This document shows, in pieces, positions 1,568 through 35,803 of a DNA stretch of 64,000 nt; the stretch's first letter is position 1, and each line of letters starts with the position of its first letter. Below the pieces are notes generated by a model. The model worked only from the letters and a program-made list of their open reading frames with translations. It was not told the DNA's origin and ran no database searches. The stretch spans positions 124,001 through 188,000 of the IMG/VR virus record IMGVR_UViG_3300001460_000004; one strand, given 5' to 3'. The position numbers were made by a program, and so were the translations under genes.

Positions 1568-1598
1568 ATACATTGGCTAAAGGAGCCAATGAAGTATG
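1565..1598 (+). promoter_or_regulatory. Late promoter TAAATA plus hairpin covering the neck-gene RBS
   Basis: TAAATA 1565-1570; CATTGGCT (1571-1578) pairs with AGCCAATG (1584-1591); the AAGGAG SD lies across the loop and 3' arm. Confidence 0.6.
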
Positions 1599-2357: not shown

Positions 2358-2361
2358 TAGT

Positions 2362-2664
2362 ATGCGAGCAATTGATTTTATATCTGAAGATTATATTATA
2401 TCAGAACATAGTATGGTTTGGAAACGAGCCAGCAATGGAACTGTAAAACTTAAATGGAAATGTGGATTTGGTCCTCGTCGAGATCGAGTAGTAAGCGATG
2501 TTAAACAATGCAGTGCAGCACCAAACTTAAAAAAATCACAAGCAATGAAAAAGACTCGGGCTAGAACTAAAGTTAAACAAGCAAGAAAAGCCAAAAAAAC
2601 TAAAAAAGTAAACCCTGCAACCAGATTAGCAACTAGATTAAATAAACTTAGCCGCAGACGATAG
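2362..2664 (+). CDS. Basic small protein with capsid-targeting-like N-terminus (MRAIDFISE)
   Basis: 100-aa Lys/Arg-rich ORF directly after the neck gene. Confidence 0.65.
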   Translation: MRAIDFISEDYIISEHSMVWKRASNGTVKLKWKCGFGPRRDRVVSDVKQCSAAPNLKKSQAMKKTRARTKVKQARKAKKTKKVNPATRLATRLNKLSRRR

Positions 2665-2670
2665 AAACTC

Positions 2671-4122
2671 ATGCAAATTGAATGTTTAGACAATCCTAAC
2701 AAGGACACAGTAGATGTTCTGTTGATTACAGTTCCGTGGACTGATAGTAGCATGCCATTGATGGCACCAGCAGTATTACTTCCTGTTATTGAAAGTACTG
2801 GTGCTACTGCTAAATGTGTTGACTTAAATATTGAAGTGTATAACATGGTAAAAGACCATGAACATAAAGATGCACTTGTTCGTTTTTTCTTTGACGAAGT
2901 AATTGATCCTGATATTGAAGAATGGGTGTTAGACATGCTTACTAGCATTGCTACACAAATCATGTCATATCAACCCAAGTATGTAGGATTAAGTTTGTTT
3001 AGTTATGTGTGTCAACACACTGCAAAATGGCTTAGTTATGTTATTAAAAAAATAGATCCTAATGTTAAAATTGTAATTGGTGGAGCAGGGTGTTTAACAA
3101 CTTTTACCGGCCCAAGTGAGTTTGCACAAGACTGCATACAACAAGGAATAGTTGATTACCATCTAAGAGGTGACGGCGAACAAGCATTTTATGAACTATT
3201 AACTGGTAATGCAGATTATCCTGGAATTAATAGTTTAGAATGGAAAGAACTTGATAGAGAAGCTCTTGCTAAACTTCCTATACCAGATTATAGACACTAT
3301 AATTTTGATCTCTATCAACAAAGAAGTTTGCCATTAGTTGGTAGTAGGGGATGTGTAAGACAGTGTAAATTTTGTGATTACATTGCTAATTGGAAGAAGT
3401 TTCAATGGCGTAATGCCGATGACATTTTTAACGAAATGTATTATCAATATAAAAAATACAAAATTAGAGATTTTAAATTTCAAGATAGTTTAACCAATGG
3501 AAACATGAAAGAGTTTTTGAGACTTACTGAGCTGTTAGCAGAACACAATCAAACAAATCCAGATGAAAAGTTTACCTGGAGTGGATATTTTATTTTTAGA
3601 AATCCAACAACAAACAGTGATTACGAATGGGAAATGATTAAAGCAAGTGGTGCTAAAGTATTAGTTGTTGGTATTGAAAATTTAAACGAACATATACGTT
3701 ATCATATAGGTAAAAAATTCAGTAATGAAGCCATTGATTATCATTTAGAGCAAGCCTATAAACATAATATTACAATACAAGTATTAAACATAGTTGGATA
3801 TATTAATGAAACTCAAGCCGATATTGACTTTGCAAAGAAATGGTTAGATGAACACACAAAATACAAAGACATGATGTATTTGCAATGGGGAGGAACACTG
3901 GGTATATTTCCTAATACCTGGCTTGAGCGTAATATTAATGATTTAGGTATAATACAAACAGACAAACATCCACAAAGTTGGGTTAATGAAAGTATTGGAA
4001 GCACACCTAGTGTAAGAGCAAACTGGGTCAAGGATCTCAATCAGTATAGTAGTAATTTAGGCTATACCGTAGCAGACAACATTGACAATCACTTTTTATT
4101 GGAAATTTTAATGAATGCTTAA
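2671..4122 (+). CDS. Cobalamin-binding radical SAM protein (class B methyltransferase-like)
   Basis: B12-binding-like segment (VGLSLF...IVIGGAG...RGDGE) followed by SRGCVRQCKFC (CxxxCxxC) and a VGIE motif. Confidence 0.85.
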   Translation: MQIECLDNPNKDTVDVLLITVPWTDSSMPLMAPAVLLPVIESTGATAKCVDLNIEVYNMVKDHEHKDALVRFFFDEVIDPDIEEWVLDMLTSIATQIMSYQPKYVGLSLFSYVCQHTAKWLSYVIKKIDPNVKIVIGGAGCLTTFTGPSEFAQDCIQQGIVDYHLRGDGEQAFYELLTGNADYPGINSLEWKELDREALAKLPIPDYRHYNFDLYQQRSLPLVGSRGCVRQCKFCDYIANWKKFQWRNADDIFNEMYYQYKKYKIRDFKFQDSLTNGNMKEFLRLTELLAEHNQTNPDEKFTWSGYFIFRNPTTNSDYEWEMIKASGAKVLVVGIENLNEHIRYHIGKKFSNEAIDYHLEQAYKHNITIQVLNIVGYINETQADIDFAKKWLDEHTKYKDMMYLQWGGTLGIFPNTWLERNINDLGIIQTDKHPQSWVNESIGSTPSVRANWVKDLNQYSSNLGYTVADNIDNHFLLEILMNA

Positions 4123-13903: not shown

Positions 13904-15538
13904 ATGAACAATATGTACAAAATTTTAGAATCGTTTAATTCAGTAACAAACGAAGATATTGCTGCAAAAGATGCTGCAGTAATGAACAAACAAAAAAACT
14001 ACAAACCTTTTGGTAAATCTGATCCTGACTATGAAACTGGTGTTGCTCGTGATCCTAAAAAAGATAAAATGTTTGACGAAGATATTGATGCAGAAGATGC
14101 TGCAGTAATGAACAAACAAAAAAACTACAAGCCTTTTGGTAAATCTGATCCTGATTATGAAACTGGTGTTGCCCGTAATTCTAAAAAAGATAAAATGTTT
14201 GACGAAGGCTATGGTTCCATGGTATCTCCAGCCGCTAAAAAAGCCATTGATGCTCGAGTAGCCGCTAATACAGCAGCACTTAAAGCAAAAGGCAAAAAGG
14301 CTGACGAATCTTACTCTCCTGGTGATGAAAACGAAGAAGATATGGTAAGCAATTGCTGTAGTGCCCCTATTTCAGATGTTAGGGATGGGCACGGCAGATG
14401 CTCAGATTGTAAAGAAATGGCAAGTGCAGTTAAATTAGATGAAGACGTGAATGAATCAAAATTTGTTTTTTTCAGTGCAGATGAAGGTGGAATTAATGTA
14501 TCAATTGATAAGGAAACAGCTGGCTGGGCATATAGTAGTGATGAGCTATGCGAATTGTTAAACAAATATAATATTAGCAGTGCTGATAGATTGGCGCACA
14601 GCAGCTCTATAGACTTTGCTAGTGAAGAAGGCTTTGATACAGACGGTGATGCACATGATATGATTCAAGATGCGTTTGTTAAGTGCGGTATTACTGAAGA
14701 TACTGCATTAATGAATGAAGCAGATGTTGAAGAAAATGCATTTAATCAAGCGGCGGCCGCGGCGGCAAGAGCCAATAAGTCAGAGTTTGAGTTTGGTGGT
14801 AAGACACATAAAACTACAATGAAAAAAGACACAGCACATAAGCTAGATGATGATGTACAAATTGACGAAGGTACAGAAATGGGCAGCATAGGCGGAATTG
14901 ATATTAAACAGTTTGGCATGGGCAAAGGTAAACTTGGCCTGCAACTTACTGGGCCTGATGGTGCTGTACAACTATCTAAAAAAGATTGTGCATCACTTGC
15001 AAAAAGAATTACTAAATGGTGCGATAGCGATGGTGCACGACCCGGCGAATACGACGAAGCAATAGAAGAAACTACTACCGCAGGTAGTGTTGCAGTATCC
15101 GAAGAACCAAAAAAGCCAGATATGAGTGCAAGTGTTTATGAGTCTGCTTATATTGATACACTTAACGAAAGTGTCAACATTACAACTAATATGAGTAGTG
15201 ACGGAGCTGACAGTATGACAGTAAGTGCTACTGACGAAGATGCAACAGCATTGGCTATGTTACTACGCAATGCTGGCATGGCAGGATCCTCATCTGGTTA
15301 TCAAGAAGTTGATGTTGATGTTGCTGAAGACTACAGCAACAGCCCTGAAGAGCAGTATCAAACTACTGAGTATCAGCAAAATAATATTGCAGGCGGCTTA
15401 AATGGACCAAAAACACAAGTTAATCCTAACAATCGCGGAGATAATCCTTTAGCAATGAAAGGTTTAGGAAACGGCGGATCAGGCCAAATTAATATTGATG
15501 AAACAAAACTATGGTCATTATATAAGGAAATGAACTAA
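13904..15538 (+). CDS. Acidic modular putative head polyprotein with internal duplication
   Basis: 544 aa, many hydrophobic-x-E sites, 42-aa tandem repeat. Confidence 0.65.
   Translation: MNNMYKILESFNSVTNEDIAAKDAAVMNKQKNYKPFGKSDPDYETGVARDPKKDKMFDEDIDAEDAAVMNKQKNYKPFGKSDPDYETGVARNSKKDKMFDEGYGSMVSPAAKKAIDARVAANTAALKAKGKKADESYSPGDENEEDMVSNCCSAPISDVRDGHGRCSDCKEMASAVKLDEDVNESKFVFFSADEGGINVSIDKETAGWAYSSDELCELLNKYNISSADRLAHSSSIDFASEEGFDTDGDAHDMIQDAFVKCGITEDTALMNEADVEENAFNQAAAAAARANKSEFEFGGKTHKTTMKKDTAHKLDDDVQIDEGTEMGSIGGIDIKQFGMGKGKLGLQLTGPDGAVQLSKKDCASLAKRITKWCDSDGARPGEYDEAIEETTTAGSVAVSEEPKKPDMSASVYESAYIDTLNESVNITTNMSSDGADSMTVSATDEDATALAMLLRNAGMAGSSSGYQEVDVDVAEDYSNSPEEQYQTTEYQQNNIAGGLNGPKTQVNPNNRGDNPLAMKGLGNGGSGQINIDETKLWSLYKEMN
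13952..14206 (+). repeat. 126-bp in-frame tandem duplication (2 copies)
   Basis: EDIAAKDAAVMNKQKNYKPFGKSDPDYETGVARDPKKDKMFD repeated nearly identically; units start at 13952 and 14078. Confidence 0.95.
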
Positions 15539-23141: not shown

Positions 23142-24116
23142 ATGGCTTCATTAGCAGAAATTCGTGCAAGACTTGCACAAGCAGAAAACAAGCAATCAGG
23201 TGGACGAGCTCCAGATTCTGATAGCGTAGTATACCCCCACTGGAACATGGATGAAGGAAAGTCAGCGTTAATGCGTTTCTTACCTGATGGCGATAGTAAT
23301 AACACGTTCTTTTGGGTAGAGCGGGCAATGATCAAACTTCCATTTAATGGCGTCAAGGGAAGCATGGACAATAAAATGACTATGGTTCATGTGCCTTGTG
23401 TTGAGATGTGGGGAGACAACTGTCCAATTCTTGCAGAAGTACGTGGTTGGTTTAAAGATCCAAGTCTTGAAGATATGGGTCGTAAGTATTGGAAAAAGCG
23501 TTCATATATTATGCAAGGCTTTGTACGTGAAAACCCAATTAGTGATGATCGTGCTCCAGAAAATCCCATTAGACGTTTCATTATGGGACCGCAAATCTTT
23601 ACTGTTATTAAGAGTGCGTTAATGGATCCTGAGCTTGAGGAAATTCCAACTGATACTATGCGTGGGTTAGACTTTCGTATTAGTAAAACCTCTAAAGGTG
23701 GTTATGCAGATTATAGCACCAGTAAATGGGCTCGTAAAGAAACTCCTTTAACAGCGGATGAACAAGCCGCAGTAGACACACATGGTTTGTTTACGTTAAA
23801 TGACTTTCTTCCAAAACGTCCTGACGATGCAGCTCTTCAAGTAATGAAAGAGATGTTTGAAGCAAGCGTAGATGGACAAAGCTATGATTTAGATCGTTGG
23901 GGATCGTACTTCCGTCCAGTGGGAATGGGTCCTGTGGCTAACACAGCACCTGCACCAACACCAGTAGCTGCACCAGTAGCTGCACCAGTAGCTGCACCAG
24001 TAACTGAAGCACCAGAAGTTAACCCAGTTACAACTCCTCCTCCAGAGGCACCTAAGAGCGATAAAGCAGAGGACATTCTTGCAATGATCCGTGCTAAACA
24101 ATCAGCAACACAGTAG
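23142..24116 (+). CDS. Single-stranded DNA-binding protein (T4 gp32-like)
   Basis: MRFLPD, C..MWG..CPI, YWKKRSY, GLDFRISKT..GGYADYSTS; Pro/Ala linker near the C-terminus. Confidence 0.9.
   Translation: MASLAEIRARLAQAENKQSGGRAPDSDSVVYPHWNMDEGKSALMRFLPDGDSNNTFFWVERAMIKLPFNGVKGSMDNKMTMVHVPCVEMWGDNCPILAEVRGWFKDPSLEDMGRKYWKKRSYIMQGFVRENPISDDRAPENPIRRFIMGPQIFTVIKSALMDPELEEIPTDTMRGLDFRISKTSKGGYADYSTSKWARKETPLTADEQAAVDTHGLFTLNDFLPKRPDDAALQVMKEMFEASVDGQSYDLDRWGSYFRPVGMGPVANTAPAPTPVAAPVAAPVAAPVTEAPEVNPVTTPPPEAPKSDKAEDILAMIRAKQSATQ
23959..24006 (+). repeat. 12-bp tandem repeat x4 (CACCAGTAGCTG) encoding a PVAA linker
   Basis: Three exact copies and one near copy. Confidence 0.9.
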
Positions 24117-25737: not shown

Positions 25738-26284
25738 TACTGCTGGGATTGGACTAGCATTAAGTGAAGAATTATCATATCGTGGACATGACATTGTTGG
25801 ATTAAGCAAGCGTAATGGTTATAACATTCGTATTACACCTAAAATAGTTGATTTGATTAAACAGTGTGATATGTTTGTTAACAATGCCCAAGTTGATTTT
25901 GCACAAACACAGTTACTATACGGAGTTTGGAAATGTTGGCAAGAATGCCCTGGTAATATAATTTGGAATATTAGTACAATGCTAACACAATGTCCAAGTA
26001 CTACTGATATAACAGATCTTGATCCAGTTGATATGAATATGTATCGCAATCAAAAACTTGCACTTGAGGATGCACACAACCAATTAAAATTTTTTGGGCA
26101 TGGGCCAAAGATGTGTTTGATTAAACCTGGTAATATACAGACACACTCAGGAAAAACAAATGCATGTAACACCACAGTGTGGGCAAAAACTGTTGTTGAC
26201 ACATATGTAACAGCACATGCACAAGGTATGCATCTTGAAGAAATAAGTATTGGATGGTTAAGCAATAAGGATAACCAAATTTAA
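25715..26284 (+). CDS. Short-chain dehydrogenase/reductase
   Basis: ITGDTAGIG, FVNNA, NIS, YRNQK (YxxxK), IKPG. Confidence 0.85.
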   Translation: MKIAITGDTAGIGLALSEELSYRGHDIVGLSKRNGYNIRITPKIVDLIKQCDMFVNNAQVDFAQTQLLYGVWKCWQECPGNIIWNISTMLTQCPSTTDITDLDPVDMNMYRNQKLALEDAHNQLKFFGHGPKMCLIKPGNIQTHSGKTNACNTTVWAKTVVDTYVTAHAQGMHLEEISIGWLSNKDNQI

Positions 26285-27429
26285 TGGATCCAAAAACTGC
26301 ACTTAAAAATGGTACATTCTGTCCATGTCCGTGGACTGGGTTTATTATGCAAGCTGATGGTAGTATTAAAAACTGTGTTGCATCCCAAGATGAAATTGGC
26401 AACATAAACAAAAATACAATACAAGAAGTGTTGGCTAGTGATCATAACCGAGAAATTAAGACAGCAATGTTAAATGGTATAAAGCACAGTAGTTGTGAAA
26501 CATGCCACATAAAAGAACAAAACAATCCATTGCGTACTAATATTATAAGCAATAGAATATATTATCTTAAAGAATTAGCTAGAGTTCCGTATGATCTTTA
26601 TACTGACGACGATGCGTTTGATCTAAACACAGTTGATCTTAGATGGAGAAACACTTGTAATTTTGCGTGTGTGTATTGTGATCCAATCAGCAGTAGTAAA
26701 TGGGCACAAGAACTCAATCAAAAGATACATATGCAAAATAGCAGTAGGCAAGATTTACTTGACTATGTGTTAGAAAATGCACACAAGTTAAAGAATATTT
26801 ACTTTGCTGGTGGCGAACCTTTAATGATCAAAGAAAATAAACAAGTACTCAAAAAACTTAAACAAGTAAACCCATTGCTAAACATTAGAGTGAACACAAA
26901 TCTAAGTAAAACCAATACTGGTATATTTGAACAGTTGTGTGAATTTAAAAATGTACATTGGATTATAAGTGTTGACTCAATGAGTACTGAATTTGAATAT
27001 ATACGCCATGGTGGTAATTGGGAACAATTTAAACAAAACTTCAAAATTATTACACAATTAGATCACAAAATTAGTTTTAACATGCTTTGGTTGATACTAA
27101 ATGCTCATAGTTTGTTTGATACTATTGATTGGTTAACTGACCAAGGCATGCACAACAATAGTATAGTACTTGGTCCTATTACTGGACCAAGTTATCTAGA
27201 CGTGAGAAATTTGCCAATTGAATTGCAACATTCTTTAGAAGATCGTATTATACAACGGCAAGACACCAACAGCACCTGGTTACTGGAACATGGATATCAA
27301 GTGCTTTTAGATCATTTAAGAAAACCATTTAATGGTAATTTAGAAAATAGTCAACACCGTCTAAGTGAGATGGACAAGCGTCGAAATATTAATCATAGGG
27401 ATATTTTTCCATGGCTATACAAACTGTAA
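26284..27429 (+). CDS. Radical SAM protein with N-terminal twitch/SPASM-like Cys cluster
   Basis: FCPCPW...KNC...CETC; CNFACVYC; AGGEP; SVD..FEYIR. Confidence 0.9.
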   Translation: MDPKTALKNGTFCPCPWTGFIMQADGSIKNCVASQDEIGNINKNTIQEVLASDHNREIKTAMLNGIKHSSCETCHIKEQNNPLRTNIISNRIYYLKELARVPYDLYTDDDAFDLNTVDLRWRNTCNFACVYCDPISSSKWAQELNQKIHMQNSSRQDLLDYVLENAHKLKNIYFAGGEPLMIKENKQVLKKLKQVNPLLNIRVNTNLSKTNTGIFEQLCEFKNVHWIISVDSMSTEFEYIRHGGNWEQFKQNFKIITQLDHKISFNMLWLILNAHSLFDTIDWLTDQGMHNNSIVLGPITGPSYLDVRNLPIELQHSLEDRIIQRQDTNSTWLLEHGYQVLLDHLRKPFNGNLENSQHRLSEMDKRRNINHRDIFPWLYKL

Positions 27430-28286
27430 TTGTTTATCCACCTGGTGGGTTTGGTAGTATGCTTGAAGCAGTATTGCGTAGATATAGTGTGCAATATCAA
27501 AGTTTAAATGAAATTGCACCAGCAGACGACGGTTCATTTCATAATTATTCTCGTGGAGAACATGTGTTTATGGTCAATGACAGTACTAACCAAGTCCAAG
27601 ATCATGTGTATAGTGTAATCTATCCAGGATACAACAAAGATATACCTGTAGCATTTGACATATTAGAGAGCCACAAGACACAAAAAGTTTTTGTAAAGAT
27701 TGGCAATAGCTTTGAAATGATACAGTGTTGGTGTTTGTTTGATCACAAAGATGATCTATTAGATCCTAACAATTTGCTTTATAAAGCAATAAACAATGCA
27801 GAAAACTTATCAAGTTGGGGATGTAGTGATTATAGTGAACTAGAAACTTGGCAAAAACGTGAACATTTAAGTTATGTATTAGATGGCATATTTGAAAAAA
27901 CTTTACTTGCAAGTACTCAAGCTCCTGACAATTGGTTTGTTATTAACTTTTCACAGTTATTGTTATCACCTAGGTATGTAATACGCAGTTTGTTTGATCA
28001 TTACAATCTTGACATGAAAGATGAAGATGACTTCACATCGATGATAAACAACTGGAAGGATGTACAAAGCCCAATTTGTGCAAGAGCTGTGCTAATTACG
28101 GATATAATACATGCAACTTTGGGATTTACTGTACCAGTTGATGTCCCTGAACTTAGCATAATGGAACAAGCAATAATACAACAACAATTAAGACAACATG
28201 GATATGAGATAAAATGTCAAGATTTAAATCATTTTCCAAGAACAACAAGTATATTAAAAGATATAATTTATAGACTTGACAAATAG
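27411..28286 (+). CDS. Hypothetical protein, P-loop/sulfotransferase-like family (paralogue of 38581 and 47907)
   Basis: N-terminal YPPGGFGSML motif shared with FMPGAMGHFL and FPGGAHGNYV. Confidence 0.6.
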   Translation: MAIQTVIVYPPGGFGSMLEAVLRRYSVQYQSLNEIAPADDGSFHNYSRGEHVFMVNDSTNQVQDHVYSVIYPGYNKDIPVAFDILESHKTQKVFVKIGNSFEMIQCWCLFDHKDDLLDPNNLLYKAINNAENLSSWGCSDYSELETWQKREHLSYVLDGIFEKTLLASTQAPDNWFVINFSQLLLSPRYVIRSLFDHYNLDMKDEDDFTSMINNWKDVQSPICARAVLITDIIHATLGFTVPVDVPELSIMEQAIIQQQLRQHGYEIKCQDLNHFPRTTSILKDIIYRLDK

Positions 28287-28304
28287 ACAAAAATAAGTTA
28301 TTAT
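28276..28304 (+). promoter_or_regulatory. sigma70-type promoter for uvsX, -35 inside the upstream gene end
   Basis: TTGACA-N17-TATTAT. Confidence 0.55.
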
Positions 28305-28336: not shown

Positions 28337-29455
28337 ATGGCAGGTAAACCATTTGACGTAAGTAAATTCCGTAAGGACATTACTAAAAGCATTGACGGAC
28401 TAAGCATTGGCTTTCATGATCCAACTGACTGGATTAGCACAGGCAACTATGCACTAAACTATCTTATTAGTGGCGACTTTAACAGAGGTGTTCCTCTAGG
28501 AAAGGTAACAGTATTTGCAGGTGAAAGCGGTGCTGGTAAATCATATATTTGTAGTGGTAATATTGTTAAGTATGCACAAGAACAAGGCATTTTTGTTGTG
28601 CTAATTGATAGTGAGAACGCACTTGACGAAGCATGGTTACATGCATTGGGAGTCAGCACTGAGGAGGATAAATTACTAAAACTTTCAATGTCAATGATTG
28701 ATGATGTTGCAAAAACTATTAGTACCTTTATGAGTGATTACAAAGCATTACCCGACGGAGAACGCCCTAAAGTGTTGTTTGTTATTGACAGTTTAGGTAT
28801 GTTGTTAACTCCCACAGATGTTGATCAGTTTAACAAAGGTGACATGAAAGGTGATTTAGGTCGTAAACCCAAAGCACTTACTGCACTTGTGCGTAACACA
28901 GTTAACATGATTGGCAGTTACAATGTTGGGCTGGTATGTACTAACCACACATATGCTTCGCAAGATATGTTTGATCCAGACGATAAGATCTCAGGTGGTC
29001 AAGGCTTTGTGTACGCAAGTAGTATTGTTGTTGCGATGAAAAAGATGAAATTAAAAGAAGATGAAGCTGGCAACAAAATTAGTGATGTGCGTGGCATACG
29101 TGCAGGATGTAAAGTTATGAAAACACGTTATGCCAAACCTTTTGAAAGTCTACAAGTAAAGATCCCATATGAAACAGGTATGAACCCCTATAGTGGTCTT
29201 GTTGACATGGCTGAGAAAAGAGGATTGTTAACTAAAGTTGGTAATCGACTACAGTTTAAATCAAACAACGGTGAGGAAGTCTTGCAATTTCGTAAAGCAT
29301 GGGAAAGCAATGCTGATGGGTGTTTAGATAAATTAATGGCACAAGTAAGTTATCTTGATGAAATGGCTGATACTGATAAATTAATTCTTGACAGCGACGA
29401 TGATACATACATGGATGAACTACAACAACAGGAGGCACTGAATGGCGAAGAATGA
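28337..29455 (+). CDS. uvsX: RecA-like recombinase
   Basis: GESGAGKS Walker A, IDSE, VIDSLG, NHTY, SGGQG, KTRYAKP. Confidence 0.92.
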   Translation: MAGKPFDVSKFRKDITKSIDGLSIGFHDPTDWISTGNYALNYLISGDFNRGVPLGKVTVFAGESGAGKSYICSGNIVKYAQEQGIFVVLIDSENALDEAWLHALGVSTEEDKLLKLSMSMIDDVAKTISTFMSDYKALPDGERPKVLFVIDSLGMLLTPTDVDQFNKGDMKGDLGRKPKALTALVRNTVNMIGSYNVGLVCTNHTYASQDMFDPDDKISGGQGFVYASSIVVAMKKMKLKEDEAGNKISDVRGIRAGCKVMKTRYAKPFESLQVKIPYETGMNPYSGLVDMAEKRGLLTKVGNRLQFKSNNGEEVLQFRKAWESNADGCLDKLMAQVSYLDEMADTDKLILDSDDDTYMDELQQQEALNGEE

Positions 29456-29723
29456 TAGTAAATCATTAGAATTGGTTTACAAAGTATGGCAAGATTTAAG
29501 AGAACATTTTGAAACTAATGATAGATCGGAATCTATTGAAACTGTTGTATCTGTGTTGTCTGATAGTGGACATTCCAGTCAAGACATTCATGACGTGTTT
29601 CAAAATGATCCTGAATTTGATAGAATTGTTAGCTTATTTTTTGAAGAAGATGTTAACGACGAGGAAGACGATCCTGATAACTTAGATGACTATTTCTTTA
29701 ATCCAGAAGAAGATGATTATTAA
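29442..29723 (+). CDS. Small acidic hypothetical protein
   Basis: 93-aa ORF between uvsX and uvsY. Confidence 0.65.
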   Translation: MAKNDSKSLELVYKVWQDLREHFETNDRSESIETVVSVLSDSGHSSQDIHDVFQNDPEFDRIVSLFFEEDVNDEEDDPDNLDDYFFNPEEDDY

Positions 29724-30175
29724 TGTGGTATAGGCGAGTAACTGCTAGTTTAGGAGAAATTCCAAACTTTATTGAATTCTATAACAAAGAATTAATAGAA
29801 GCTAAAAAAGAATGTACTGTTTCTGGGCTAGTAGAACTTGCTATAAAAGAATTACCAGGCGTTACTGAACACAGATTTAATCAACTTCAAGAGATTGAAG
29901 CAATATTAAATTATTTAAATATACAAGCTAGAAAAATTAGACGCAAGCATTTTCAAAAATATCTTGAAGGATATGCAAAAGCACTTTCTAGTAGAGATGC
30001 TGAAAAGTATGTAGATGGTGAGGATGAAGTTATTGATTTTGAAACGTTGATCAATGAAGTTGCATTACTTCGGAATACATACTTGGGTATACTTAAAGGA
30101 TTAGAAACAAAACAATGGCAAATGGGACACATTGTAAGATTGCGTACTGCTGGCATGGAAGATATTAGAGTTTGA
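29723..30175 (+). CDS. uvsY: Recombination mediator (UvsY-like)
   Basis: 150-aa helical protein near uvsX; KYVDGEDEV...LKGLETKQWQMGHIV pattern. Confidence 0.7.
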   Translation: MWYRRVTASLGEIPNFIEFYNKELIEAKKECTVSGLVELAIKELPGVTEHRFNQLQEIEAILNYLNIQARKIRRKHFQKYLEGYAKALSSRDAEKYVDGEDEVIDFETLINEVALLRNTYLGILKGLETKQWQMGHIVRLRTAGMEDIRV

Positions 30176-30760
30176 TATTTTCACAAGCACATCAGAATGC
30201 AATTGAAAAAGGCAAAGAGTTTCATTTAGAAAACCCTACATGGTCTGGAACTGACAGTAAGCACTATCTTAAATACACTAAAAAGTTAGCAAAATATTAC
30301 AATATTAAAAACATACTTGATTACGGGTGTGGTAAGGGATTACAGTACGAAAAAGGTTACATGGATAAAATTGGTATTGAAGATGCTTATTTGTACGATC
30401 CTTGTGTTTCTAAATATAATAAATTTCCTCCCAAGGGTGCCAAGTTTGATGCTATATTGTGTATGCAAGTTATAAAACATATCCCAGATGAAGACTTACC
30501 TGCACTTAAACAATTCTTTGAACAAACTGCAACTAAATTTGTATTAATTGCCGATGTTGATCCCAGTGTTCCATCAAAAAAGAAAAAACAACTTATACAG
30601 GATTGGCGCAATCGAGATAACGCTTTTTACAAAAGTATGTTTGCTGACACCTGGTCCAGCTCGGCTAAATTATATTTTGCTTGGCACCAACCCATGGATA
30701 CAAAAGCAAGAGAAGATAACTTAAAAATACAGGAGATTAGAGTTTGACATTTTCATCAGC
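30164..30760 (+). repeat. Direct repeat at both junctions of the methyltransferase gene 30172-30747
   Basis: ATTAGAGTTTGA(T/C)ATTTTCAnnAGC at 30164-30188 and 30736-30760. Confidence 0.75.
30172..30747 (+). CDS. Class I SAM-dependent methyltransferase
   Basis: ILDYGCGKG, LYDP, FDAILCMQVIKHIP. Confidence 0.85.
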   Translation: MIFSQAHQNAIEKGKEFHLENPTWSGTDSKHYLKYTKKLAKYYNIKNILDYGCGKGLQYEKGYMDKIGIEDAYLYDPCVSKYNKFPPKGAKFDAILCMQVIKHIPDEDLPALKQFFEQTATKFVLIADVDPSVPSKKKKQLIQDWRNRDNAFYKSMFADTWSSSAKLYFAWHQPMDTKAREDNLKIQEIRV

Positions 30761-31490
30761 GGACTTGAGTCATCAGCATTCATTGCAAACCTTAGAAGAA
30801 CTATACCAGTTTGATGATTTTATGATGAGTGTGCGAACATTAGCTGATATGGGTTGCGGAAAAGGCAATGACATTGAATGGTGGGCAACTCGTACTACTC
30901 GGGATGAGCATAAAAAGCTATTAAATATCAAATGTACTGGAGTTGACACTACAGAAAAGTTACTGGTTGCTAATGAATATCCAAACATAAGTTATCAACG
31001 GCAGGACTTTGAAGATCCGTTTAAAAGAAAATTTGATGTAATATGGTGCCACGATGCTTTTCAGTACGCAATAAATCCACTTATTACTTTAAAAAATTGG
31101 AATAAAGCACTCACATCAGACGGGATGCTGGTAATTATTTTACCGCAACAAACTGTTATGGAGTTTAGAAGGCAAGCCTTTGATCAACCGCACGGCGTGT
31201 ATTATAACTGGACACTTATAAGTCTTATACATGCACTTGCTGTTAATGGATTTGATTGCGCCGGCGGATTTTTTAAAAAAGAAAGAGATGATCCTTGGTT
31301 ACATGCTATTGTGTACAAAAGCGAAGTAAAGCCAATGGATCCCCGTACTACTACTTGGTATGATTTAGCCGAAGCAGGGCTTTTACCAAGCACATTGTGT
31401 TCTGGTGTAGAAAAATATGCTAAAGCTAGACAACGTGATTTAATATTACCTTGGTTAGGTGGCTCTTTAATTTCATATAGTGATTACTGA
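30744..31490 (+). CDS. Class I SAM-dependent methyltransferase
   Basis: LADMGCGKG, FDVIWCHDAFQY. Confidence 0.85.
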   Translation: MTFSSADLSHQHSLQTLEELYQFDDFMMSVRTLADMGCGKGNDIEWWATRTTRDEHKKLLNIKCTGVDTTEKLLVANEYPNISYQRQDFEDPFKRKFDVIWCHDAFQYAINPLITLKNWNKALTSDGMLVIILPQQTVMEFRRQAFDQPHGVYYNWTLISLIHALAVNGFDCAGGFFKKERDDPWLHAIVYKSEVKPMDPRTTTWYDLAEAGLLPSTLCSGVEKYAKARQRDLILPWLGGSLISYSDY

Positions 31491-32336
31491 TTTTAATCTA
31501 GAAAGTGGTAATCCGTTAGCAATTTCTTCCACTGTAAATTCACTCCAGGCAATATCGTTGAGCCATTGTTGCCTGTCTGGCAGTAGAGGATTTTCTATAT
31601 CGTATAAAAAATCTATATCGTTAGCCACATCGTAAGCAAGACTATGGGTACTAACAAAAGCAGGAACACCATTGACACAAGAGTGCGTCCCCGGATTTGA
31701 GCTGTAACTGACAGTAGCCCACACATTATTGAAATCCATATCAAAGTCATCATAGGTGCCGTTAACATGTTGTGGTTCCTGTCTGTGTACATTTTTAAGT
31801 CCACGTTCTATATGTTCTAATCTACAACGTGGGTGTGGTCGAAATACAATTGGACGCTGTGTGTATTTACGTATTTCGTCGTATGTTTCTAAGAACCAAT
31901 TGCTCATACGTGGCATATTTTGCCACTGTAAACTCTTATCGTGTTGTCCGCATACTAAAATAAAATCCCCGTTGGATCTCCAAGGTTTACAAACCAGTCC
32001 CAAGCTAACAGCCCTAGACCTATCATTGTCTTGCTCACCAAAGTAAGCATCTCTGTTAATTCCATTTAGTCCTACTTTCCATGTTGTTCCGCGTTTGATA
32101 CTACCAACTTCGAGGACAATAACTGGTTTCCGAAGTTTTTGACAATGGGCCCAAATATCTTTGTTACGAGCCATTCTACCGTGAAACAAAACGCTCCAAA
32201 TAACATGAACATCGGAATCGTTAATATTATCACTGTTACCAATGTGGTGCCCATTAGCAATACAACTATGCTCAAAAGCATCAAAAATAGATTTTGCATT
32301 TAGTGCTCCATACTTTCTCCAGAGCTTGAATTTCAT
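31473..32336 (-). CDS. KpsS/KpsC-like capsular polysaccharide (GT-B) protein
   Basis: LVCGQHDKS, FRPHP, SSNPG..S..NGVPAF, RQQWL. Confidence 0.6.
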   Translation of the reverse strand: MKFKLWRKYGALNAKSIFDAFEHSCIANGHHIGNSDNINDSDVHVIWSVLFHGRMARNKDIWAHCQKLRKPVIVLEVGSIKRGTTWKVGLNGINRDAYFGEQDNDRSRAVSLGLVCKPWRSNGDFILVCGQHDKSLQWQNMPRMSNWFLETYDEIRKYTQRPIVFRPHPRCRLEHIERGLKNVHRQEPQHVNGTYDDFDMDFNNVWATVSYSSNPGTHSCVNGVPAFVSTHSLAYDVANDIDFLYDIENPLLPDRQQWLNDIAWSEFTVEEIANGLPLSRLKSVITI

Positions 32337-33205
32337 TATGAATTCCAGTACGCCTCTGGTCGATTGACCATTATATCTTTAGCCAAACTTTTACCTGTAT
32401 CCTTACGGGCACCTTTCATATGATCAAGCCATTTGCCAAGTGCACCATTAATTAAGGGATGCCCTCCCCCGCCTGATTTTGCTTCTTTTAAATACATCTC
32501 AGCACTGTAATCGTGTGCAGTTGGAAAGTCTGCTTTCATTTTATTAAGTATATGACCAAATACATAACTGTCATGCCATTCTTCTAATGTGAAAATACCA
32601 TGTTCAGCATCTTCATACATACGTTCAAACTCTTTAAGGAACTCGTGGCACACTGGATGATTTAGATTTAATCCATAAAATCCACACTCAGGCCAAGTCT
32701 GTGATCCTTTTCCTCTACCTACATATGTAATCCAGGCATTGTCTGGTAATTGTTCTGCAAACTGTTCATAACTCCATTCACTGTGTACAAATGTATCTGC
32801 ATCCATCCATATACACCAGTCTTTAGAGCGTGTACAAGCGTCATACACAGCATATGTCTTGTTAGCAAAGCGTATAGCATCCCATTTAAATGTTTTTTGC
32901 CAATCTTTACGACTGCGTTGCGGTTCATTACTAATATCACCGTTTGCTTTAGGTATATTACACCAACGTTCTTTAAATGCATTTAATTTTGGTAATGCTT
33001 GTTTTGCATTAATTATTTCTATTTGGCCAGGATTAGGGTTGTCAGGCATACAATCTTCTACATATACTAATAGTTTAATACGTTTGTCTACTTGTTGTAC
33101 AAAACTATTTAAAAAACGCTGTCCGTACTTTCTCATTCCATCTGGATGAAATGTTGTTAATACTGTTATATTTTTCTTCATATATATTTCCTCATGTGAC
33201 GCCAT
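32336..33205 (-). CDS. GT-A glycosyltransferase-like protein (start probably 33181)
   Basis: RFANK, WMDADT (DxD), ECGF, WHDSYVF, HMKG. Confidence 0.7.
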   Translation of the reverse strand: MASHEEIYMKKNITVLTTFHPDGMRKYGQRFLNSFVQQVDKRIKLLVYVEDCMPDNPNPGQIEIINAKQALPKLNAFKERWCNIPKANGDISNEPQRSRKDWQKTFKWDAIRFANKTYAVYDACTRSKDWCIWMDADTFVHSEWSYEQFAEQLPDNAWITYVGRGKGSQTWPECGFYGLNLNHPVCHEFLKEFERMYEDAEHGIFTLEEWHDSYVFGHILNKMKADFPTAHDYSAEMYLKEAKSGGGGHPLINGALGKWLDHMKGARKDTGKSLAKDIMVNRPEAYWNS

Positions 33206-34092
33206 GCCTCGCCGCTGCGTAGTTCTTCAAAGCTCCAGTGAAACATACTAATACGTTCTAACCATGCTTGTCTGTCAAACTCAATTGGATTTTCAATTCT
33301 ACTAAAATCGTTATGTGCAACTTCTTTGCACTGGCTTTTAATTGGGTCAGTTACAAATGCATGAAAACCTTGTATGATAGGACCAACTATACTGCTACTG
33401 TTATGATTAACAACAGCCCATGCTTTGTGTAAGTCTTGTTCAAGTGGAGTATCAAACGGGCTTATAGTAGTGTTATGCAAATTGTTTACTCGGCAGTTTT
33501 TTCCAGTCAGATACTCTTTGGCCCTTTTATCCCCTGGATGAGCTCGTATTACGATAAGACGGTCTGTGTGAACTCTAATTTTTCTTACAGTTTCAATTAT
33601 CCAATCTTGTATATTAATTCCATCCATGCTCCAACCACCATTGCGTTGACAGCAGAGTATTATATATTTTCCTCTAGTTTTATAAGGTAGTAATTCAATT
33701 TGGGTTTCGCGTTGTATTTTCTTCCATCGATGTCGGTGCGGATTATCATCAAAGTATATTCCAGTAGTTGGAAAAATACCATCAATGCTGTATCGTAAAT
33801 ACCCCCATGGATTTGCTGAATTTGAATACAGGAATAAGTTTGCATCGGCACATAAAGTTCTTGCATTGCACTCAATTACTCGTCGGCGCAAATCTAAGTG
33901 AGGAGTATGAGTTTGCTCATACACCCAACCTTGTATCATATTTAAGTCACTTGGGATAACATCAAATCCATCATGAATAATTCCTTGATCGCCACATGCA
34001 CAGACTCCTGTGATAAAATCTTGAAGGAGTTGTATTTTTTGAGGTTTATTATTTCTACCTGGAACTGATTTTAAATAGCTAACTACTTTCAT
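33178..34092 (-). CDS. KpsS/KpsC-like capsular polysaccharide (GT-B) protein
   Basis: LCCQR, IRAHP, VNHNSS, RQAWL; paralogous to 31473-32336. Confidence 0.6.
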   Translation of the reverse strand: MKVVSYLKSVPGRNNKPQKIQLLQDFITGVCACGDQGIIHDGFDVIPSDLNMIQGWVYEQTHTPHLDLRRRVIECNARTLCADANLFLYSNSANPWGYLRYSIDGIFPTTGIYFDDNPHRHRWKKIQRETQIELLPYKTRGKYIILCCQRNGGWSMDGINIQDWIIETVRKIRVHTDRLIVIRAHPGDKRAKEYLTGKNCRVNNLHNTTISPFDTPLEQDLHKAWAVVNHNSSSIVGPIIQGFHAFVTDPIKSQCKEVAHNDFSRIENPIEFDRQAWLERISMFHWSFEELRSGEAWRHMRKYI

Positions 34093-35803
34093 TTAGCATT
34101 TCCCATGCAAATCCTGACAACATTTCTTGAGGTGTAAATTGACAATAACTCAAATGTGCTGCAAATTCAATAACATCTTGTTTTTGTGGAATATATAAAT
34201 CATTTAAATCAGATATTTTTGTGTTACACAATGCACTGGCAGAATTAGCAGCAAGAGCAATAGCTGGTACTCCATGTAACATTGCTTCTGTTGCAGCAAT
34301 ACTATTATATGTTATTAACACATATGCTTTATCTAATGCATCCCATATAGTGTCAGAACTAATACGCTCGGTTCTAGTAGGTTTATCTCTCATATTAATA
34401 GGACGATCGGTGAATTTTCTAATTTCCTTTACAGTATTATACATCCACTTGTCGGGATCCTCCCCGTAAAATTTCATTACTTTCCCACTGGGTGGACAAA
34501 TTAATATTTCATCACCTCGTTTTTTCTTTTCAGGAAAGTGATATCCTATCTTGTTTAACCTATCGTGCGGCCGCTTTCTTATTTCACTTAAATTTTGCAT
34601 ACCGTTTTTAGTAATACGGTGATACGTTTTATGTTTAAAATTACCAAGATACCCAGTATCTAAATAATAAAAAGTTCTTCCATTTGCTATACAGTCTTTG
34701 ATTGCTTCCTGGCACTTTCCACTGAGACCTCGGATCAATAACGGAGTAGTTGATTTCTTTTCTCGATTGTAACTTGATATTCTGCCATTAGAGCCTTTAA
34801 CAAAATTAACACATATAGGATCGTATTTTAATCCTCTTTCCTCATAAGGTGCATCGCTTTCAATTGAAACACATCTTATTGTTTTACTATCTGGGTGTCG
34901 CATTTGATCTAGCTCCTTGTTATCAAAATATCTATCTTTTGGGTCTATGAGTCTTTCAAAACTTTTTTTTAAATATGCTCGGGCTTCAAGACTAAAAGGT
35001 AAATGATCGATTGGCTCTTCTTTACCTTCCCAGTACGGTGCTTTTAATTTTTCTTGAGTGTCAAATAATTGTTGGTGCAAACACCTTCTCTCAACTTTAT
35101 AGTATTCATTGGCATATTCACAATCTTCATGTTCTTTAAACCATGGGCCGCCTTCTGTGTAATGCAACGCTTTGGGTGTGCCGTGAACACCTTCATGGTA
35201 CCAACCTACTAACCAATTCCATTCGTGTGAAAACTCTCCTAAGTATCTATCAGTAATCCAGCTAAATCGATGCAAATACTTCCCAGTCTGTTGATTTACT
35301 ACTTTTGCTGTAACAAACTTGTTCTTTACATGTCCACAATTGATTAGCATACAACTGCTCCAATTTTTACGTGGATACAAGTGTTGGGCTTGTCCGTCCA
35401 TTTTAGTAGACTCAGTTGGAGTGTAGTCATGATGGGCACACATTATTGCATATTTGTCATCACGCTCATTAAATAATTTCCTAACATCATCCAAGAAAAC
35501 AAAGTCGCAATCAACAAACAATGCCCAACCTTTAAAATTACACAACTCGGGTATTAAAAATCGGGTAAACGTAAATTCAGTACTGCTAAGTGTATCAATT
35601 TCTCGGGTATACAATCCTGCCCCACGTAGATTTTTCTGTTTAAGGGGTACAATTTTAACTGGACCAGTAGCATGATCAAGTATACTTTGCTTGCATACTC
35701 GATAGGCAATATCTTCGCGGCTATCCCAACCTACAAATACATGCAGGGTTTCTAATTCTTCGTTTATGTTATCACCATCCAAAGATATAATCCTTCCTAA
35801 CAT
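34079..35803 (-). CDS. Fusion: GT8-like GT-A glycosyltransferase + KpsS-like domain
   Basis: FVGWDSRE, STEFTFTRF, FVDCDF, YPRKNWSS, HYTEGGPW; C-terminal LDTGY...NSIAATEAMLHGVP. Confidence 0.75.
   Translation of the reverse strand: MLGRIISLDGDNINEELETLHVFVGWDSREDIAYRVCKQSILDHATGPVKIVPLKQKNLRGAGLYTREIDTLSSTEFTFTRFLIPELCNFKGWALFVDCDFVFLDDVRKLFNERDDKYAIMCAHHDYTPTESTKMDGQAQHLYPRKNWSSCMLINCGHVKNKFVTAKVVNQQTGKYLHRFSWITDRYLGEFSHEWNWLVGWYHEGVHGTPKALHYTEGGPWFKEHEDCEYANEYYKVERRCLHQQLFDTQEKLKAPYWEGKEEPIDHLPFSLEARAYLKKSFERLIDPKDRYFDNKELDQMRHPDSKTIRCVSIESDAPYEERGLKYDPICVNFVKGSNGRISSYNREKKSTTPLLIRGLSGKCQEAIKDCIANGRTFYYLDTGYLGNFKHKTYHRITKNGMQNLSEIRKRPHDRLNKIGYHFPEKKKRGDEILICPPSGKVMKFYGEDPDKWMYNTVKEIRKFTDRPINMRDKPTRTERISSDTIWDALDKAYVLITYNSIAATEAMLHGVPAIALAANSASALCNTKISDLNDLYIPQKQDVIEFAAHLSYCQFTPQEMLSGFAWEMLNESS

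What the first reader, a model, noticed from the sequence alone, without database searches (positions are those of the whole stretch)
30164..30760. Methyltransferase gene bracketed by a duplicated gene junction
Seen: ATTAGAGTTTGA(T/C)ATTTTCAnnAGC occurs at both ends, so UvsY ends EDIRV*, the inserted gene ends QEIRV*, and both downstream genes start with an overlapping TTG (MIFS.A / MTFS.A). Inference: footprint of a cassette insertion (or duplication then replacement) that preserves translational coupling and allows precise excision; a possible mechanism for how accessory genes enter core operons.
Basis: partly seen in the sequence, partly recalled or inferred. Interest (0 to 1): 0.6.

Follow-up and report, generated by a model that had tools for sequence, protein, structure and literature searches.

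The report
Gene inserted into a duplicated junction
In this marine jumbo phage a small methyltransferase gene sits inside what is a single overlapping stop/start junction between uvsY and the next gene in related phages, and that junction is now present on both sides of it; this is a clean example of a known way that phages gain genes, not a new mobile element.

Summary
A 28-nt direct repeat (24/28 identical; core 19/20) lies at 30161-30188 and 30733-30760, in the same register at two successive TTGA stop/start overlaps (uvsY|MT1 and MT1|MT2).

The insertion reading is supported:
- More than 60 distinct relatives join uvsY directly to an MT2 homologue. These include the two nearest empty-site lineages, L308/L337 and L332.
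- L332's single junction carries both halves of the repeat side by side.
- MT1 and MT2 are not tandem paralogues. MT1 belongs to a separate methyltransferase family that sits elsewhere in other phages.

It is not a fresh footprint:
- A second lineage (L246/L247/L164, about 66% nt identity) has the same uvsY-MT1-MT2 order, and the two uvsY-linked MT1 genes form a clade.
- The two junction copies in this genome are far more alike (14/15 and 14/18) than either MT1 end is to its orthologue (10/15 and 7/18). This points to later homogenisation, or to a younger event in this lineage.

Not supported:
- No excision product appeared in four metagenomes.
- Seven other insertions at the same site lack such repeats.
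- No other such junction pair exists in the 230-kb record.

The closest precedents are mycobacteriophage Island3 gene 68 and the PeSL cassettes of T4-type phages. I also found a strong RNA hairpin centred on the uvsY|MT1 overlap.

The parts
28276..28304 (+). Promoter-like site (TTGACA, 17 nt, TATTAT; 11 of 12) just upstream of uvsX. It is the likely start of the uvsX-g93-uvsY-MT1-MT2 transcription unit (inferred).
   Evidence: The total number of promoter-like sites in the region is no higher than in shuffles, so this is a consensus match only. No terminator-like site lies inside the chain.
28337..29455 (+). uvsX (RecA-like recombinase, 372 aa). It overlaps the next gene by 14 nt.
   Evidence: PHROG 97, UvsX-like recombinase, E 6.6e-69. 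blastn matches uvsX/recA of Rak2-, GAP32- and PA5oct-type jumbo phages at 65-69%.
29442..29723 (+). g93, an acidic 93-aa protein of unknown function. It is a marker of the marine clade. Its stop overlaps the uvsY start (TAATG).
   Evidence: no family. It is 54-65% identical in L246, L308 and L332 and about 30% in freshwater relatives.
29723..30175 (+). uvsY (recombination mediator, 150 aa), ending ...GMEDIRV*.
   Evidence: PHROG 231, UvsY-like, E 5.9e-14. More than 600 relatives in IMG/VR, the best 80 at 72-81% aa identity.
30161..30188 (+). Junction copy J1. It holds the last codons of uvsY, the TTGA stop/start overlap and the first six codons of MT1.
30138..30204 (+). Predicted RNA hairpin centred on J1. 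Its 5' arm is the last 11 uvsY codons and its 3' arm is MT1 codons 1-11. The apical loop is 30168-30172, so the MT1 TTG sits at the loop/stem edge.
   Evidence: -24.6 kcal/mol, z -5.0, 0 of 200 shuffles fold as well; z -4.3 in my own runs. It is in the top 0.75% of 81-mers in the window. It is absent at J2, at J1 of L246 and L164, at the junctions of 21 empty-site relatives and in the predicted empty site.
30172..30747 (+). MT1, the inserted gene. It is a 191-aa class I SAM-dependent methyltransferase (Methyltransf_23) with motif I DYGCGKG. It starts TTG and ends ...QEIRV*.
   Evidence: Pfam PF13489, 39.9 bits against a cut-off of 27. Homologues and alignment. Tree.
30733..30760 (+). Junction copy J2. 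It holds the last codons of MT1 (a copy of the uvsY tail), the TTGA overlap and the first six codons of MT2. An AGGAG lies 8 nt upstream of the TTG.
30744..31490 (+). MT2, a 248-aa class I SAM-dependent methyltransferase (Methyltransf_11/_31/_12). It is the gene that follows uvsY directly in most relatives.
   Evidence: Pfam. 346 relatives in IMG/VR; the best 80, apart from the window's own strain, are 52-61% identical. Direct junctions.
31473..32336 (-). dn287, a convergent 287-aa gene of unknown function whose 3' end overlaps MT2's 3' end by 18 nt. It marks the right-hand conserved flank.
   Evidence: 70-80% identical in the marine clade and 43-50% in freshwater relatives. No Pfam or NCBIfam hit.

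Best explanation
What it is. In this group of uvsX/uvsY-bearing jumbo phages, uvsY is normally followed at once by the methyltransferase gene MT2, with the stop and start codons overlapping. In this phage a methyltransferase gene of a different family, MT1, lies inside that junction. The junction sequence now stands on both sides of MT1. It comprises the last 3-4 uvsY codons, the TTGA overlap and the first 3-6 MT2 codons.

How it works. MT1 starts on a copy of the MT2 start and stops on a copy of the uvsY stop. The chain of overlapping, presumably translationally coupled genes uvsX-g93-uvsY-MT1-MT2 is therefore unbroken.

How it arose (inferred). Recombination at short homologies, by unequal crossover or copy-choice, joined the junction to the ends of an MT1-family gene. 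That gene's native ends already resembled the junction: family N-termini read M-x-x-S-Q and the tails are hydrophobic. No dedicated mobility enzyme was involved.

When (inferred). The event is old. A second marine lineage has the same gene order, and the two uvsY-linked MT1 genes form a clade.

Why the copies are still nearly identical (inferred). In this genome the two copies are much more alike than either MT1 end is to its orthologue. They were therefore most likely homogenised later in this lineage, by gene conversion or by renewed recombination between the two junctions. The phage's own UvsX/UvsY system is the obvious agent.

Hairpin (inferred). The lineage-specific hairpin across uvsY|MT1 would hide the weak TTG start until a ribosome finishing uvsY melts it. 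That would make MT1 expression depend on uvsY translation.

Shown here: the repeat, the gene models, the empty sites, the separate ancestry of MT1, the second lineage and the greater similarity of paralogous than orthologous copies. Inferred: the recombination mechanism, the homogenisation and the coupling.
For: - Repeat and register.
- Empty sites: 62 distinct direct uvsY|MT2 junctions among IMG/VR relatives, most with an ATGA overlap and reading ...MEDIQV* then M-T/I-F....
- Nearest empty sites in the marine clade, which is supported 100/100. L308/L337 has uvsX 90% and uvsY 82% identical, its uvsY ends MEDIRV*, and the lineage is seen in 24 contigs. L332's single junction has the same AGAGTTTGA, then two bases, then TTTTCATCA, and also uses a TTG start.
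- MT1 is not a paralogue of MT2: only 9/31 identities around motif I.
- MT1 has its own family. Sixteen homologues at 36-51% identity have the same length and similar ends. The marine ones sit in unrelated sugar-modification contexts. In the one freshwater relative whose neighbourhood I examined (contig of L010/L191), and in L033, the MT1-like gene lies on the opposite strand about 3.5 kb downstream of uvsY.
- Second lineage with uvsY-MT1-MT2-dn287: L246, L247 and L164.
- MT1 of the two lineages forms a clade, support 96/86. No third lineage was found.
- Paralogues more alike than orthologues. The window MT1 tail matches the window uvsY tail at 14/15, the L308 and L332 uvsY tails at 12/15 and the L246 MT1 tail at 10/15. 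The window MT1 head matches the window MT2 head at 14/18 and the L246 MT1 head at 7/18.
- No transposase, terminal inverted repeat or homing-endonuclease gene.
- Hairpin.
- Published precedents for recombination at short repeats that flank phage genes: PMC3029335 and PMC2839356.
Against: - The branching order inside the marine clade is unresolved. The best tree is (L246,(win,(L321,(L308,L332)))), but a window+L246 clade is not rejected (p-AU 0.24). I therefore cannot tell one gain, one gain plus one loss, or two gains apart.
- Homogenisation is inferred from one genome against one sister lineage. No conversion tract or intermediate was seen.
- Part of the head similarity (TCA CAA against TCA TCA) is native to both families and is not a product of duplication.
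- The junction itself evolves slowly. By my count of the junction sequences printed, the window and L332 share about 23 of 29 bases there. Selection could therefore explain part of the similarity.
- The hairpin shows that the MT1 head may be under its own selection.
- Translational coupling was not tested.
- With a one-codon gap, the window and L246 MT1 heads are 11/15 identical. The head contrast is therefore weaker than the tail contrast.
Confidence: 0.6

Rival explanations
1. Recent or recurrent cassette movement. MT1, bounded by the junction repeat, is an active unit. It loops out by recombination between J1 and J2 and re-enters single junctions of co-infecting relatives, as PeSL mini-circles are proposed to do. 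On this view the window's near-perfect repeat is a young target duplication. The empty sites in L308 and L332 are either never-occupied sites or precise excisions.
For: - The copies are nearly identical, and the MT1 tail matches this lineage's own uvsY tail better than those of L308 or L332 (14 against 12 of 15).
- In the best tree the two MT1-bearing lineages are a basal grade rather than a clade. That would need a precise loss or a second gain.
- The empty sites are perfectly clean junctions.
- The mechanism has experimental precedent in T4-type phages (PMC2839356).
Against: - No 572-nt skip and no empty-site contig at strain level in four independent metagenomes. All contigs bridging J1 or J2 match exactly. 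These are contigs only, so rare forms would be missed.
- No close MT1 donor exists anywhere in the searched collections. The next relative is 51% identical.
- MT1 divergence between the two lineages (about 50%) is no smaller than that of the flanking MT2 (about 49%), as expected for vertical descent.
- The L246 lineage shows no head repeat and only a weak tail repeat.
Confidence: 0.22
2. No duplication at all. The two junctions look alike because both must provide the same stop/start overlap and initiation context, and because the native ends of MT1 happen to resemble the uvsY tail and the MT2 head. That is convergence plus chance.
For: - MT1-family proteins natively begin M-x-x-S-Q, and some begin MFSQ. 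Many end in a short hydrophobic tail of similar length.
- The junction is conserved across lineages.
- In an all-against-all comparison of 34,453 start contexts, one unrelated pair scores as high (28/37).
Against: - The identity includes synonymous and otherwise free positions: 12 of 12 bases across ATT AGA GTT TGA, where relatives vary.
- The same coupling need is met in L246 with quite different sequences at its two junctions (TAATG against TTGA).
- No other junction in the genome carries the motif.
- A tail identity of 14/15 is reached by about 3 in 100,000 tail pairs.
Confidence: 0.08
3. Tandem duplication of MT2 with its junction, after which the upstream copy diverged (or was replaced) to give MT1.
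For: Both genes are class I SAM methyltransferases with a GCGKG motif I, and both begin M-x-F-S.
Against: - Only 29% identity over 31 residues, with nothing else alignable.
- MT1 groups with a separate family whose members lie elsewhere in other phages.
- A copy diverged that far could not keep 24/28 identity only at its very ends.
Confidence: 0.03

Closest known systems
Mycobacteriophage Island3 gene 68 insertion relative to Brujita (Pope et al. 2011, PLoS One 6:e16329, PMC3029335; read)
   Same: A small gene is present in one phage and absent from its relative. Its C-terminal residues and their nucleotides repeat the C-terminus of the upstream gene. The authors concluded that recombination occurred between the short repeats, either as a deletion in one parent or as an insertion from an unknown partner. 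No mobility enzyme is involved.
   Different: There the repeat is about 50 bp and covers 18 C-terminal residues. Here it is 28 nt and spans an overlapping stop/start, so it copies both the upstream gene's tail and the downstream gene's head. Here the arrangement is also shared by a second, deeply diverged lineage, and the inserted gene has a recognisable family and an identifiable ancestry.
PeSL (promoter-early stem-loop) cassettes of T4-type phages (Arbiol et al. 2010, PMC2839356; Comeau et al. 2014, PMC4122927)
   Same: Short repeats flank single accessory ORFs that are present or absent between related phages carrying T4-type recombination genes. The insertion or excision model uses homologous recombination between the flanking repeats, without an integrase. 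The repeat carries the expression signals that the inserted gene needs.
   Different: PeSLs are intergenic promoter/terminator modules present in many copies across the hyperplastic regions, and their mini-circles were shown by inverse PCR. Here the repeat is coding sequence at a translationally coupled junction. It contains no promoter or terminator and exists in only two copies in 230 kb. No excision product was seen.
Target-site duplications of IS elements and transposons
   Same: A direct repeat of target sequence lies on both sides of inserted DNA.
   Different: There is no transposase and there are no terminal inverted repeats. The 547 bp between the copies encode only the body of MT1. 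From general knowledge, 28 nt is far longer than usual target duplications.
Phage mosaicism by illegitimate or short-homology recombination at gene boundaries (reviewed in the introduction of PMC3029335)
   Same: The new joints lie exactly at gene ends, so all genes stay intact. The region downstream of uvsY is a replacement hot spot carrying varied cargo in relatives.
   Different: Most such joints leave no repeat. Here both joints keep a recognisable copy of the original junction.

Membership tests
Class I SAM-dependent methyltransferases (MT1: Pfam Methyltransf_23; MT2: Methyltransf_11/_31/_12) | Profile match above Pfam's gathering score, and a glycine-rich motif I | tested here: met
   MT1 scores 39.9 bits against a cut-off of 27. 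MT2 scores 41.5, 40.0 and 36.3 bits against cut-offs of 27, 21.2 and 30. DYGCGKG in MT1 is invariant across its family. The substrate is unknown: NCBIfam gives only sub-threshold hits.
UvsY recombination mediator | Profile match, and a position next to uvsX | tested here: met
   PHROG 231, E 5.9e-14, over residues 28-145. It lies 270 nt downstream of the uvsX stop. There is no Pfam hit.
PeSL cassette (T4-type phages) | The repeat is an intergenic early promoter plus stem-loop/terminator module | tested here: not met
   There is no intergenic space: both junctions are 4-nt gene overlaps. No promoter-like or terminator-like site lies in either copy.
PeSL cassette (T4-type phages) | Many copies of the motif dispersed through the hyperplastic regions of the genome | tested here: not met
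   Only the two copies in 230 kb, plus one 3-mismatch chance match.
PeSL cassette (T4-type phages) | The flanked ORF is present or absent between related phages | tested here: met
   The ORF is absent in L308/L337, L332 and 62 distinct freshwater junctions.
PeSL cassette (T4-type phages) | Circular excision products (mini-circles) | not testable with these tools
   Only assembled contigs of public runs were available. They show no deletion joint. Circles would need inverse PCR or raw reads.
IS element or transposon with target-site duplication | A transposase gene and terminal inverted repeats inside the duplicated target | tested here: not met
   The insert encodes only MT1. No inverted repeat lies at its ends; the best pairs are internal 10-16-nt chance matches.
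Tandem paralogues | Full-length homology between the two adjacent genes | tested here: not met
   BLASTP aligns 31 residues at 29% identity and nothing else. The two genes have separate families and trees.
Short-repeat-bounded gene insertion of the Island3 gene 68 type | The inserted gene's 3' end repeats the 3' end of the upstream gene at nucleotide level, and a relative lacks the gene | tested here: met
   Tail identity is 14/15 nt, reading (D/E)-I-R-V-stop in both genes. Empty sites. This is a described pattern rather than a curated family.
Homing-endonuclease-driven insertion | An endonuclease gene in or beside the insert | tested here: not met
   No such domain in MT1, its neighbours or the alternative inserts of relatives.

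The most novel reading that the evidence does not exclude
The duplicated stop/start junction is a live recombination site. It would act as a promoter-less, integrase-less 'coupling cassette' system in which the phage's own UvsX/UvsY machinery repeatedly loops single ORFs out of translationally coupled operons and puts them back. Concerted evolution of the two copies would be its signature. The empty sites in L308 and L332 would then be precise excisions, and the J1 hairpin would set the expression of whatever gene sits in the slot.
Probability: 0.15. Interest if true: 0.7.

Novelty: new variant of a known kind. Interest (0 to 1): 0.4.

Why it matters
The locus shows, with an unusually complete set of comparison genomes, how a phage can add a gene to the middle of a tightly coupled operon without breaking it. 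The newcomer borrows the start of the gene behind it and the stop of the gene in front of it.

The finding that the two borrowed copies are more alike than their orthologues suggests that such junction repeats stay recombinationally active long after the insertion. That bears on how accessory genes are kept or lost in jumbo phages.

It is not a new class of mobile element, and it does not generalise within this genome or at this site in relatives.

Tried and rejected
1. Excision product. There was no joint between the repeats, and MT1 was in place with 0 differences.

2. The 17-nt core in IMG/VR. There were 54 hits. Only the window's own strain has it next to uvsY or MT2; the rest are chance matches.

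3. Do other insertions at this site carry junction duplications? Seven relatives have 0.9-1.05 kb between uvsY and MT2, and none does. The cargo there and at sites lacking MT2 is varied: phosphoribosyltransferase, GT8, another Methyltransf_23 and unknowns.

4. Co-variation of the tails in the second lineage. I first read MEDVTL*/MELTL* as co-varying with MEDIRV*/QEIRV*. In register, the L246 MT1 tail matches its own uvsY tail at 9/15, the same as it matches the window's uvsY tail. The null gives p of about 0.01-0.04. I dropped this as not significant.

5. MT2 allele replacement. Percent identities suggested that the window's MT2 groups with freshwater alleles. However, a tree holding the window together with the marine MT2s is not rejected and is marginally better (p-AU 0.54). 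Dropped.

6. The uvsY-only tree (116 rows) gave no resolution for the window or L246, which are both long branches.

7. Conservation of the J1 hairpin. It is absent in the L246 and L164 J1 junctions, in 21 empty-site relatives and in the predicted empty site. It is therefore lineage-specific and has no covariation support.

8. A third MT1-bearing lineage. I searched with an MT1 alignment in IMG/VR, MT1+P0002 in JGI metagenomes, g93 in IMG/VR and the protein collection, and P0002 in the protein collection. None was found. The exhaustive representative search was not run, because the word searches left nothing open that it was likely to change.

9. L082 carries 380 nt identical to the window and then unrelated sequence. 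The breakpoint lies inside MT1, not at the repeat, and the remainder is not in the 230-kb record. I treat it as a probable assembly chimera.

10. MT1 or MT2 paralogues elsewhere in the record: none.
Full report
**1. The observation.**

- uvsY is 29723-30175, identified by PHROG 231 at E 5.9e-14, and ends EDIRV*.
- Its TGA overlaps a TTG at 30172 that opens a 191-aa ORF, MT1, which ends QEIRV*.
- MT1's TGA overlaps a TTG at 30744 that opens a 248-aa ORF, MT2.
- In both cases an in-frame TAG lies two codons upstream of the TTG, so TTG is the only possible start.

The repeat is real.
It never occurs in 100 shuffles.
- It extends to 28 nt, 30161-30188 and 30733-30760, with 24/28 identical.
- The 20-nt core has no other close copy in the 230-kb record.
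- I compared all start contexts of 263 crude gene calls in register. This pair scores 27/37 and is the best of 400 neighbouring pairs (mean 13.1, sd 3.0, next best 22).
- The MT1 and uvsY tails agree at 14 of 15 bases, a level reached by about 3 in 100,000 tail pairs in this genome.

**2. Setting.**

The window is part of a 230-kb viral record estimated to be 66% complete. Its uvsX matches, at 65-69% nt identity, the uvsX/recA genes of Rak2-, GAP32- and PA5oct-type jumbo phages.

uvsX, g93, uvsY, MT1 and MT2 form an unbroken chain of overlaps of 14, 1, 4 and 4 nt. A good promoter-like site lies at 28276-28304, and there is no terminator-like site inside the chain. MT2 converges on dn287, which lies on the other strand.

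Both MT1 (Methyltransf_23) and MT2 (Methyltransf_11/_31/_12) pass Pfam's thresholds. Their substrates are unknown.

**3. Empty sites exist.**

IMG/VR holds more than 600 uvsY relatives and 346 MT2 relatives. Among the loci fetched there are 62 distinct sequences in which uvsY is joined directly to an MT2 homologue. Most use an ATGA overlap, and they read ...GMEDIQV* followed by M-T/I-F....

A search with dn287 and g93 found the window's own clade. It is marine and is separated from the freshwater relatives with 100/100 support. Two lineages within it are empty.
- L308/L337 has uvsX 90%, uvsY 82% and g93 64% identical. It was seen in 24 contigs from many samples. Its uvsY ends MEDIRV*, as in the window.
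- L332 has a single junction that reads AGAGTTTGA, two bases, then TTTTCATCA, with a TTG start. That is the left half of J1 and the right half of J2 side by side.

The repeat is therefore one ancestral junction present twice.

**4. MT1 is foreign to the site and is not a copy of MT2.**

MT1 and MT2 share 9 of 31 residues around motif I and nothing else. MT1 has its own family.
- The marine homologues (46-50% identical) lie in unrelated contexts beside radical-SAM, sulfotransferase-like and UDP-glucose dehydrogenase genes.
- Freshwater relatives carry 33-41% homologues. In the two contigs whose neighbourhood I checked (L010/L191 and L033), the gene lies on the opposite strand about 3.5 kb downstream of uvsY.

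No paralogue of either gene exists elsewhere in the record. The insert has no transposase, endonuclease or terminal inverted repeats.

**5. The arrangement is old.**

The closest MT1 homologue (P0002/P0022, about 51% identical) lies in L164, L246 and L247. These contigs come from other marine assemblies (L246 is a TARA scaffold) and have the order uvsX-g93-uvsY-MT1-MT2-dn287. They are about 66% identical to the window at nucleotide level.
- In an MT1 family tree the two uvsY-linked genes form a clade (96/86). It is sister to the marine homologues that are not linked to uvsY.
- Their divergence (about 50%) is like that of the flanking MT2 (about 49%). This gives no sign of recent transfer between the lineages.
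- The order of branching inside the marine clade is unresolved. The best tree is (L246,(window,(L321,(L308,L332)))), but a window+L246 clade is not rejected (p-AU 0.24).

One gain, one gain plus one clean loss, and two gains therefore all remain possible. The MT1 clade favours a single origin.

**6. Yet the copies in this genome are young-looking.**

In register:

| Window sequence | Compared with | Identity |
|---|---|---|
| MT1 tail | window uvsY tail | 14/15 |
| MT1 tail | L308 and L332 uvsY tails | 12/15 |
| MT1 tail | its orthologue, the L246 MT1 tail | 10/15 |
| MT1 head | window MT2 head | 14/18 |
| MT1 head | L246 MT1 head | 7/18 (11/15 with a one-codon gap) |

In L246 the two junctions differ in type (TAATG against TTGA). 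They share only a weak tail resemblance of 9-10/15, with p of about 0.01-0.04.

If the duplication dated from a single old insertion, and nothing had happened since, the copies within one genome should be no more alike than orthologues are. They are much more alike. Either the two copies were homogenised in the window's lineage, by gene conversion or renewed recombination between them, or the window's event is younger than the other lineage's.

Part of the head match (TCA CAA against TCA TCA) is native to both families. It may have been the microhomology that guided the original joint.

**7. What was not found.**

- Contigs of four independent metagenomes carry this strain with MT1 in place and no 572-nt skip. 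Contigs drop rare variants, so this is weak evidence against excision.
- The core motif occurs next to uvsY or MT2 only in this strain.
- Seven relatives with other genes inserted between uvsY and MT2 have no junction duplication.
- The site is nevertheless a hot spot. Cargo there, or replacing MT2, includes a phosphoribosyltransferase, a GT8 glycosyltransferase, another Methyltransf_23 and unknowns.
- No third MT1-bearing lineage turned up.

**8. A hairpin at J1.**

The 67 nt at 30138-30204 fold into a long hairpin of -24.6 kcal/mol, with z between -4.3 and -5.0. It lies in the top 0.75% of 81-mers in the window.
- The 5' arm is the end of uvsY and the 3' arm is the first 11 codons of MT1.
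- The TTG start sits at the edge of the apical loop.
- The one difference in the repeat core (T in J1, C in J2) completes a base pair in this stem.
- The structure is absent at J2, where an AGGAG precedes the TTG. It is also absent in L246 and L164, in 21 empty-site relatives and in the predicted empty site.

I read it as a lineage-specific device that makes MT1 translation depend on ribosomes finishing uvsY. This is inference, and it has no covariation support.

**9. Comparison with what is known.**

The closest described case is mycobacteriophage Island3 gene 68. It is absent from Brujita, and its C-terminal 18 residues and their nucleotides repeat the end of the upstream gene. The authors inferred recombination between repeats of about 50 bp, in either direction (PMC3029335).

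The closest mechanism with experimental support is PeSL-mediated shuffling in T4-type phages. There, repeats flanking ORFans recombine to give mini-circles (PMC2839356; PMC4122927). This locus fails the defining PeSL features: it is not an intergenic promoter/terminator module and it is not present in many copies. It is also not a transposon-type duplication.

It therefore works like these systems, through recombination at short repeats at gene ends without a dedicated enzyme. It is a variant in which the repeat is an overlapping stop/start junction.

**10. Verdict.**

- The insertion reading is supported.
- The 'recent footprint', 'precise excision' and 'general mechanism' readings are not supported by present data.

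Confidence that this is an insertion bounded by a duplicated junction is about 0.85. Confidence in the full account, meaning an old short-homology insertion with later homogenisation, is about 0.6.

Noticed in passing
window 30138-30204 (+): A strong predicted RNA hairpin (-24.6 kcal/mol, z about -4.3 to -5) is centred on the uvsY|MT1 stop/start overlap. It is specific to this lineage and absent at the MT1|MT2 junction. It may enforce translational coupling of MT1 to uvsY.
   Followed up: yes
L082 (IMGVR_UViG_3300025137_007773), positions 1-380 against 381-4085: The first 380 nt are 100% identical to window 29853-30232. The contig then continues with unrelated sequence, beginning in the middle of an acidic ORF that has no start. 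The break is inside MT1, 44 nt past J1, and the remainder is not in the 230-kb record. This is probably an assembly chimera, but a real rearrangement is not excluded.
   Followed up: partly
relatives: L005 2758-4011, L001 2776-4011, L073 2683-4014; L018 1260-2187; L010 4393-5151; L031 4727-5359: Both sides of uvsY are hot spots in the wider phage group. A radical-SAM-like gene of about 415 aa sits between g93 and uvsY in some relatives. Downstream of uvsY, relatives carry a phosphoribosyltransferase, a GT8 glycosyltransferase, another Methyltransf_23 or unknown genes of about 340 aa, instead of or in front of MT2.
   Followed up: partly
window 31473-32336, 33178-34092 and about 34109-34648 (- strand): dn287 has two distant paralogues (30% and 24% identical) close by on the same strand, interleaved with a weakly GT2-like gene at 32336-33205. 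Related contigs carry a Glyco_transf_25 gene here. Together with the two methyltransferases this looks like a glycan- or small-molecule-modification cluster.
   Followed up: partly
window 26284-27429 (+): A twitch-domain radical SAM protein (NCBIfam N_Twi_rSAM, E 8e-76; Pfam Radical_SAM plus an N-terminal SPASM-like domain) lies two genes upstream of uvsX.
   Followed up: no
window 13950-14201: A perfect-register tandem duplication of 126 nt (two copies, 94% identical), presumably a repeated 42-residue unit inside a gene.
   Followed up: no
window 23946-24005: A run of 12-nt units (GCACCAGTAGCT-like) that would encode an Ala/Pro/Val-rich linker.
   Followed up: no
runs X1-X24: The exact strain recurs in marine and brine metagenomes from at least three studies between 2017 and 2020 (word shares 0.95-1.0). 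Its nearest relatives come from marine assemblies such as TARA, whereas the large IMG/VR sister group appears to come from other, probably freshwater, samples. The freshwater habitat is my inference from sample identifiers and was not checked.
   Followed up: no
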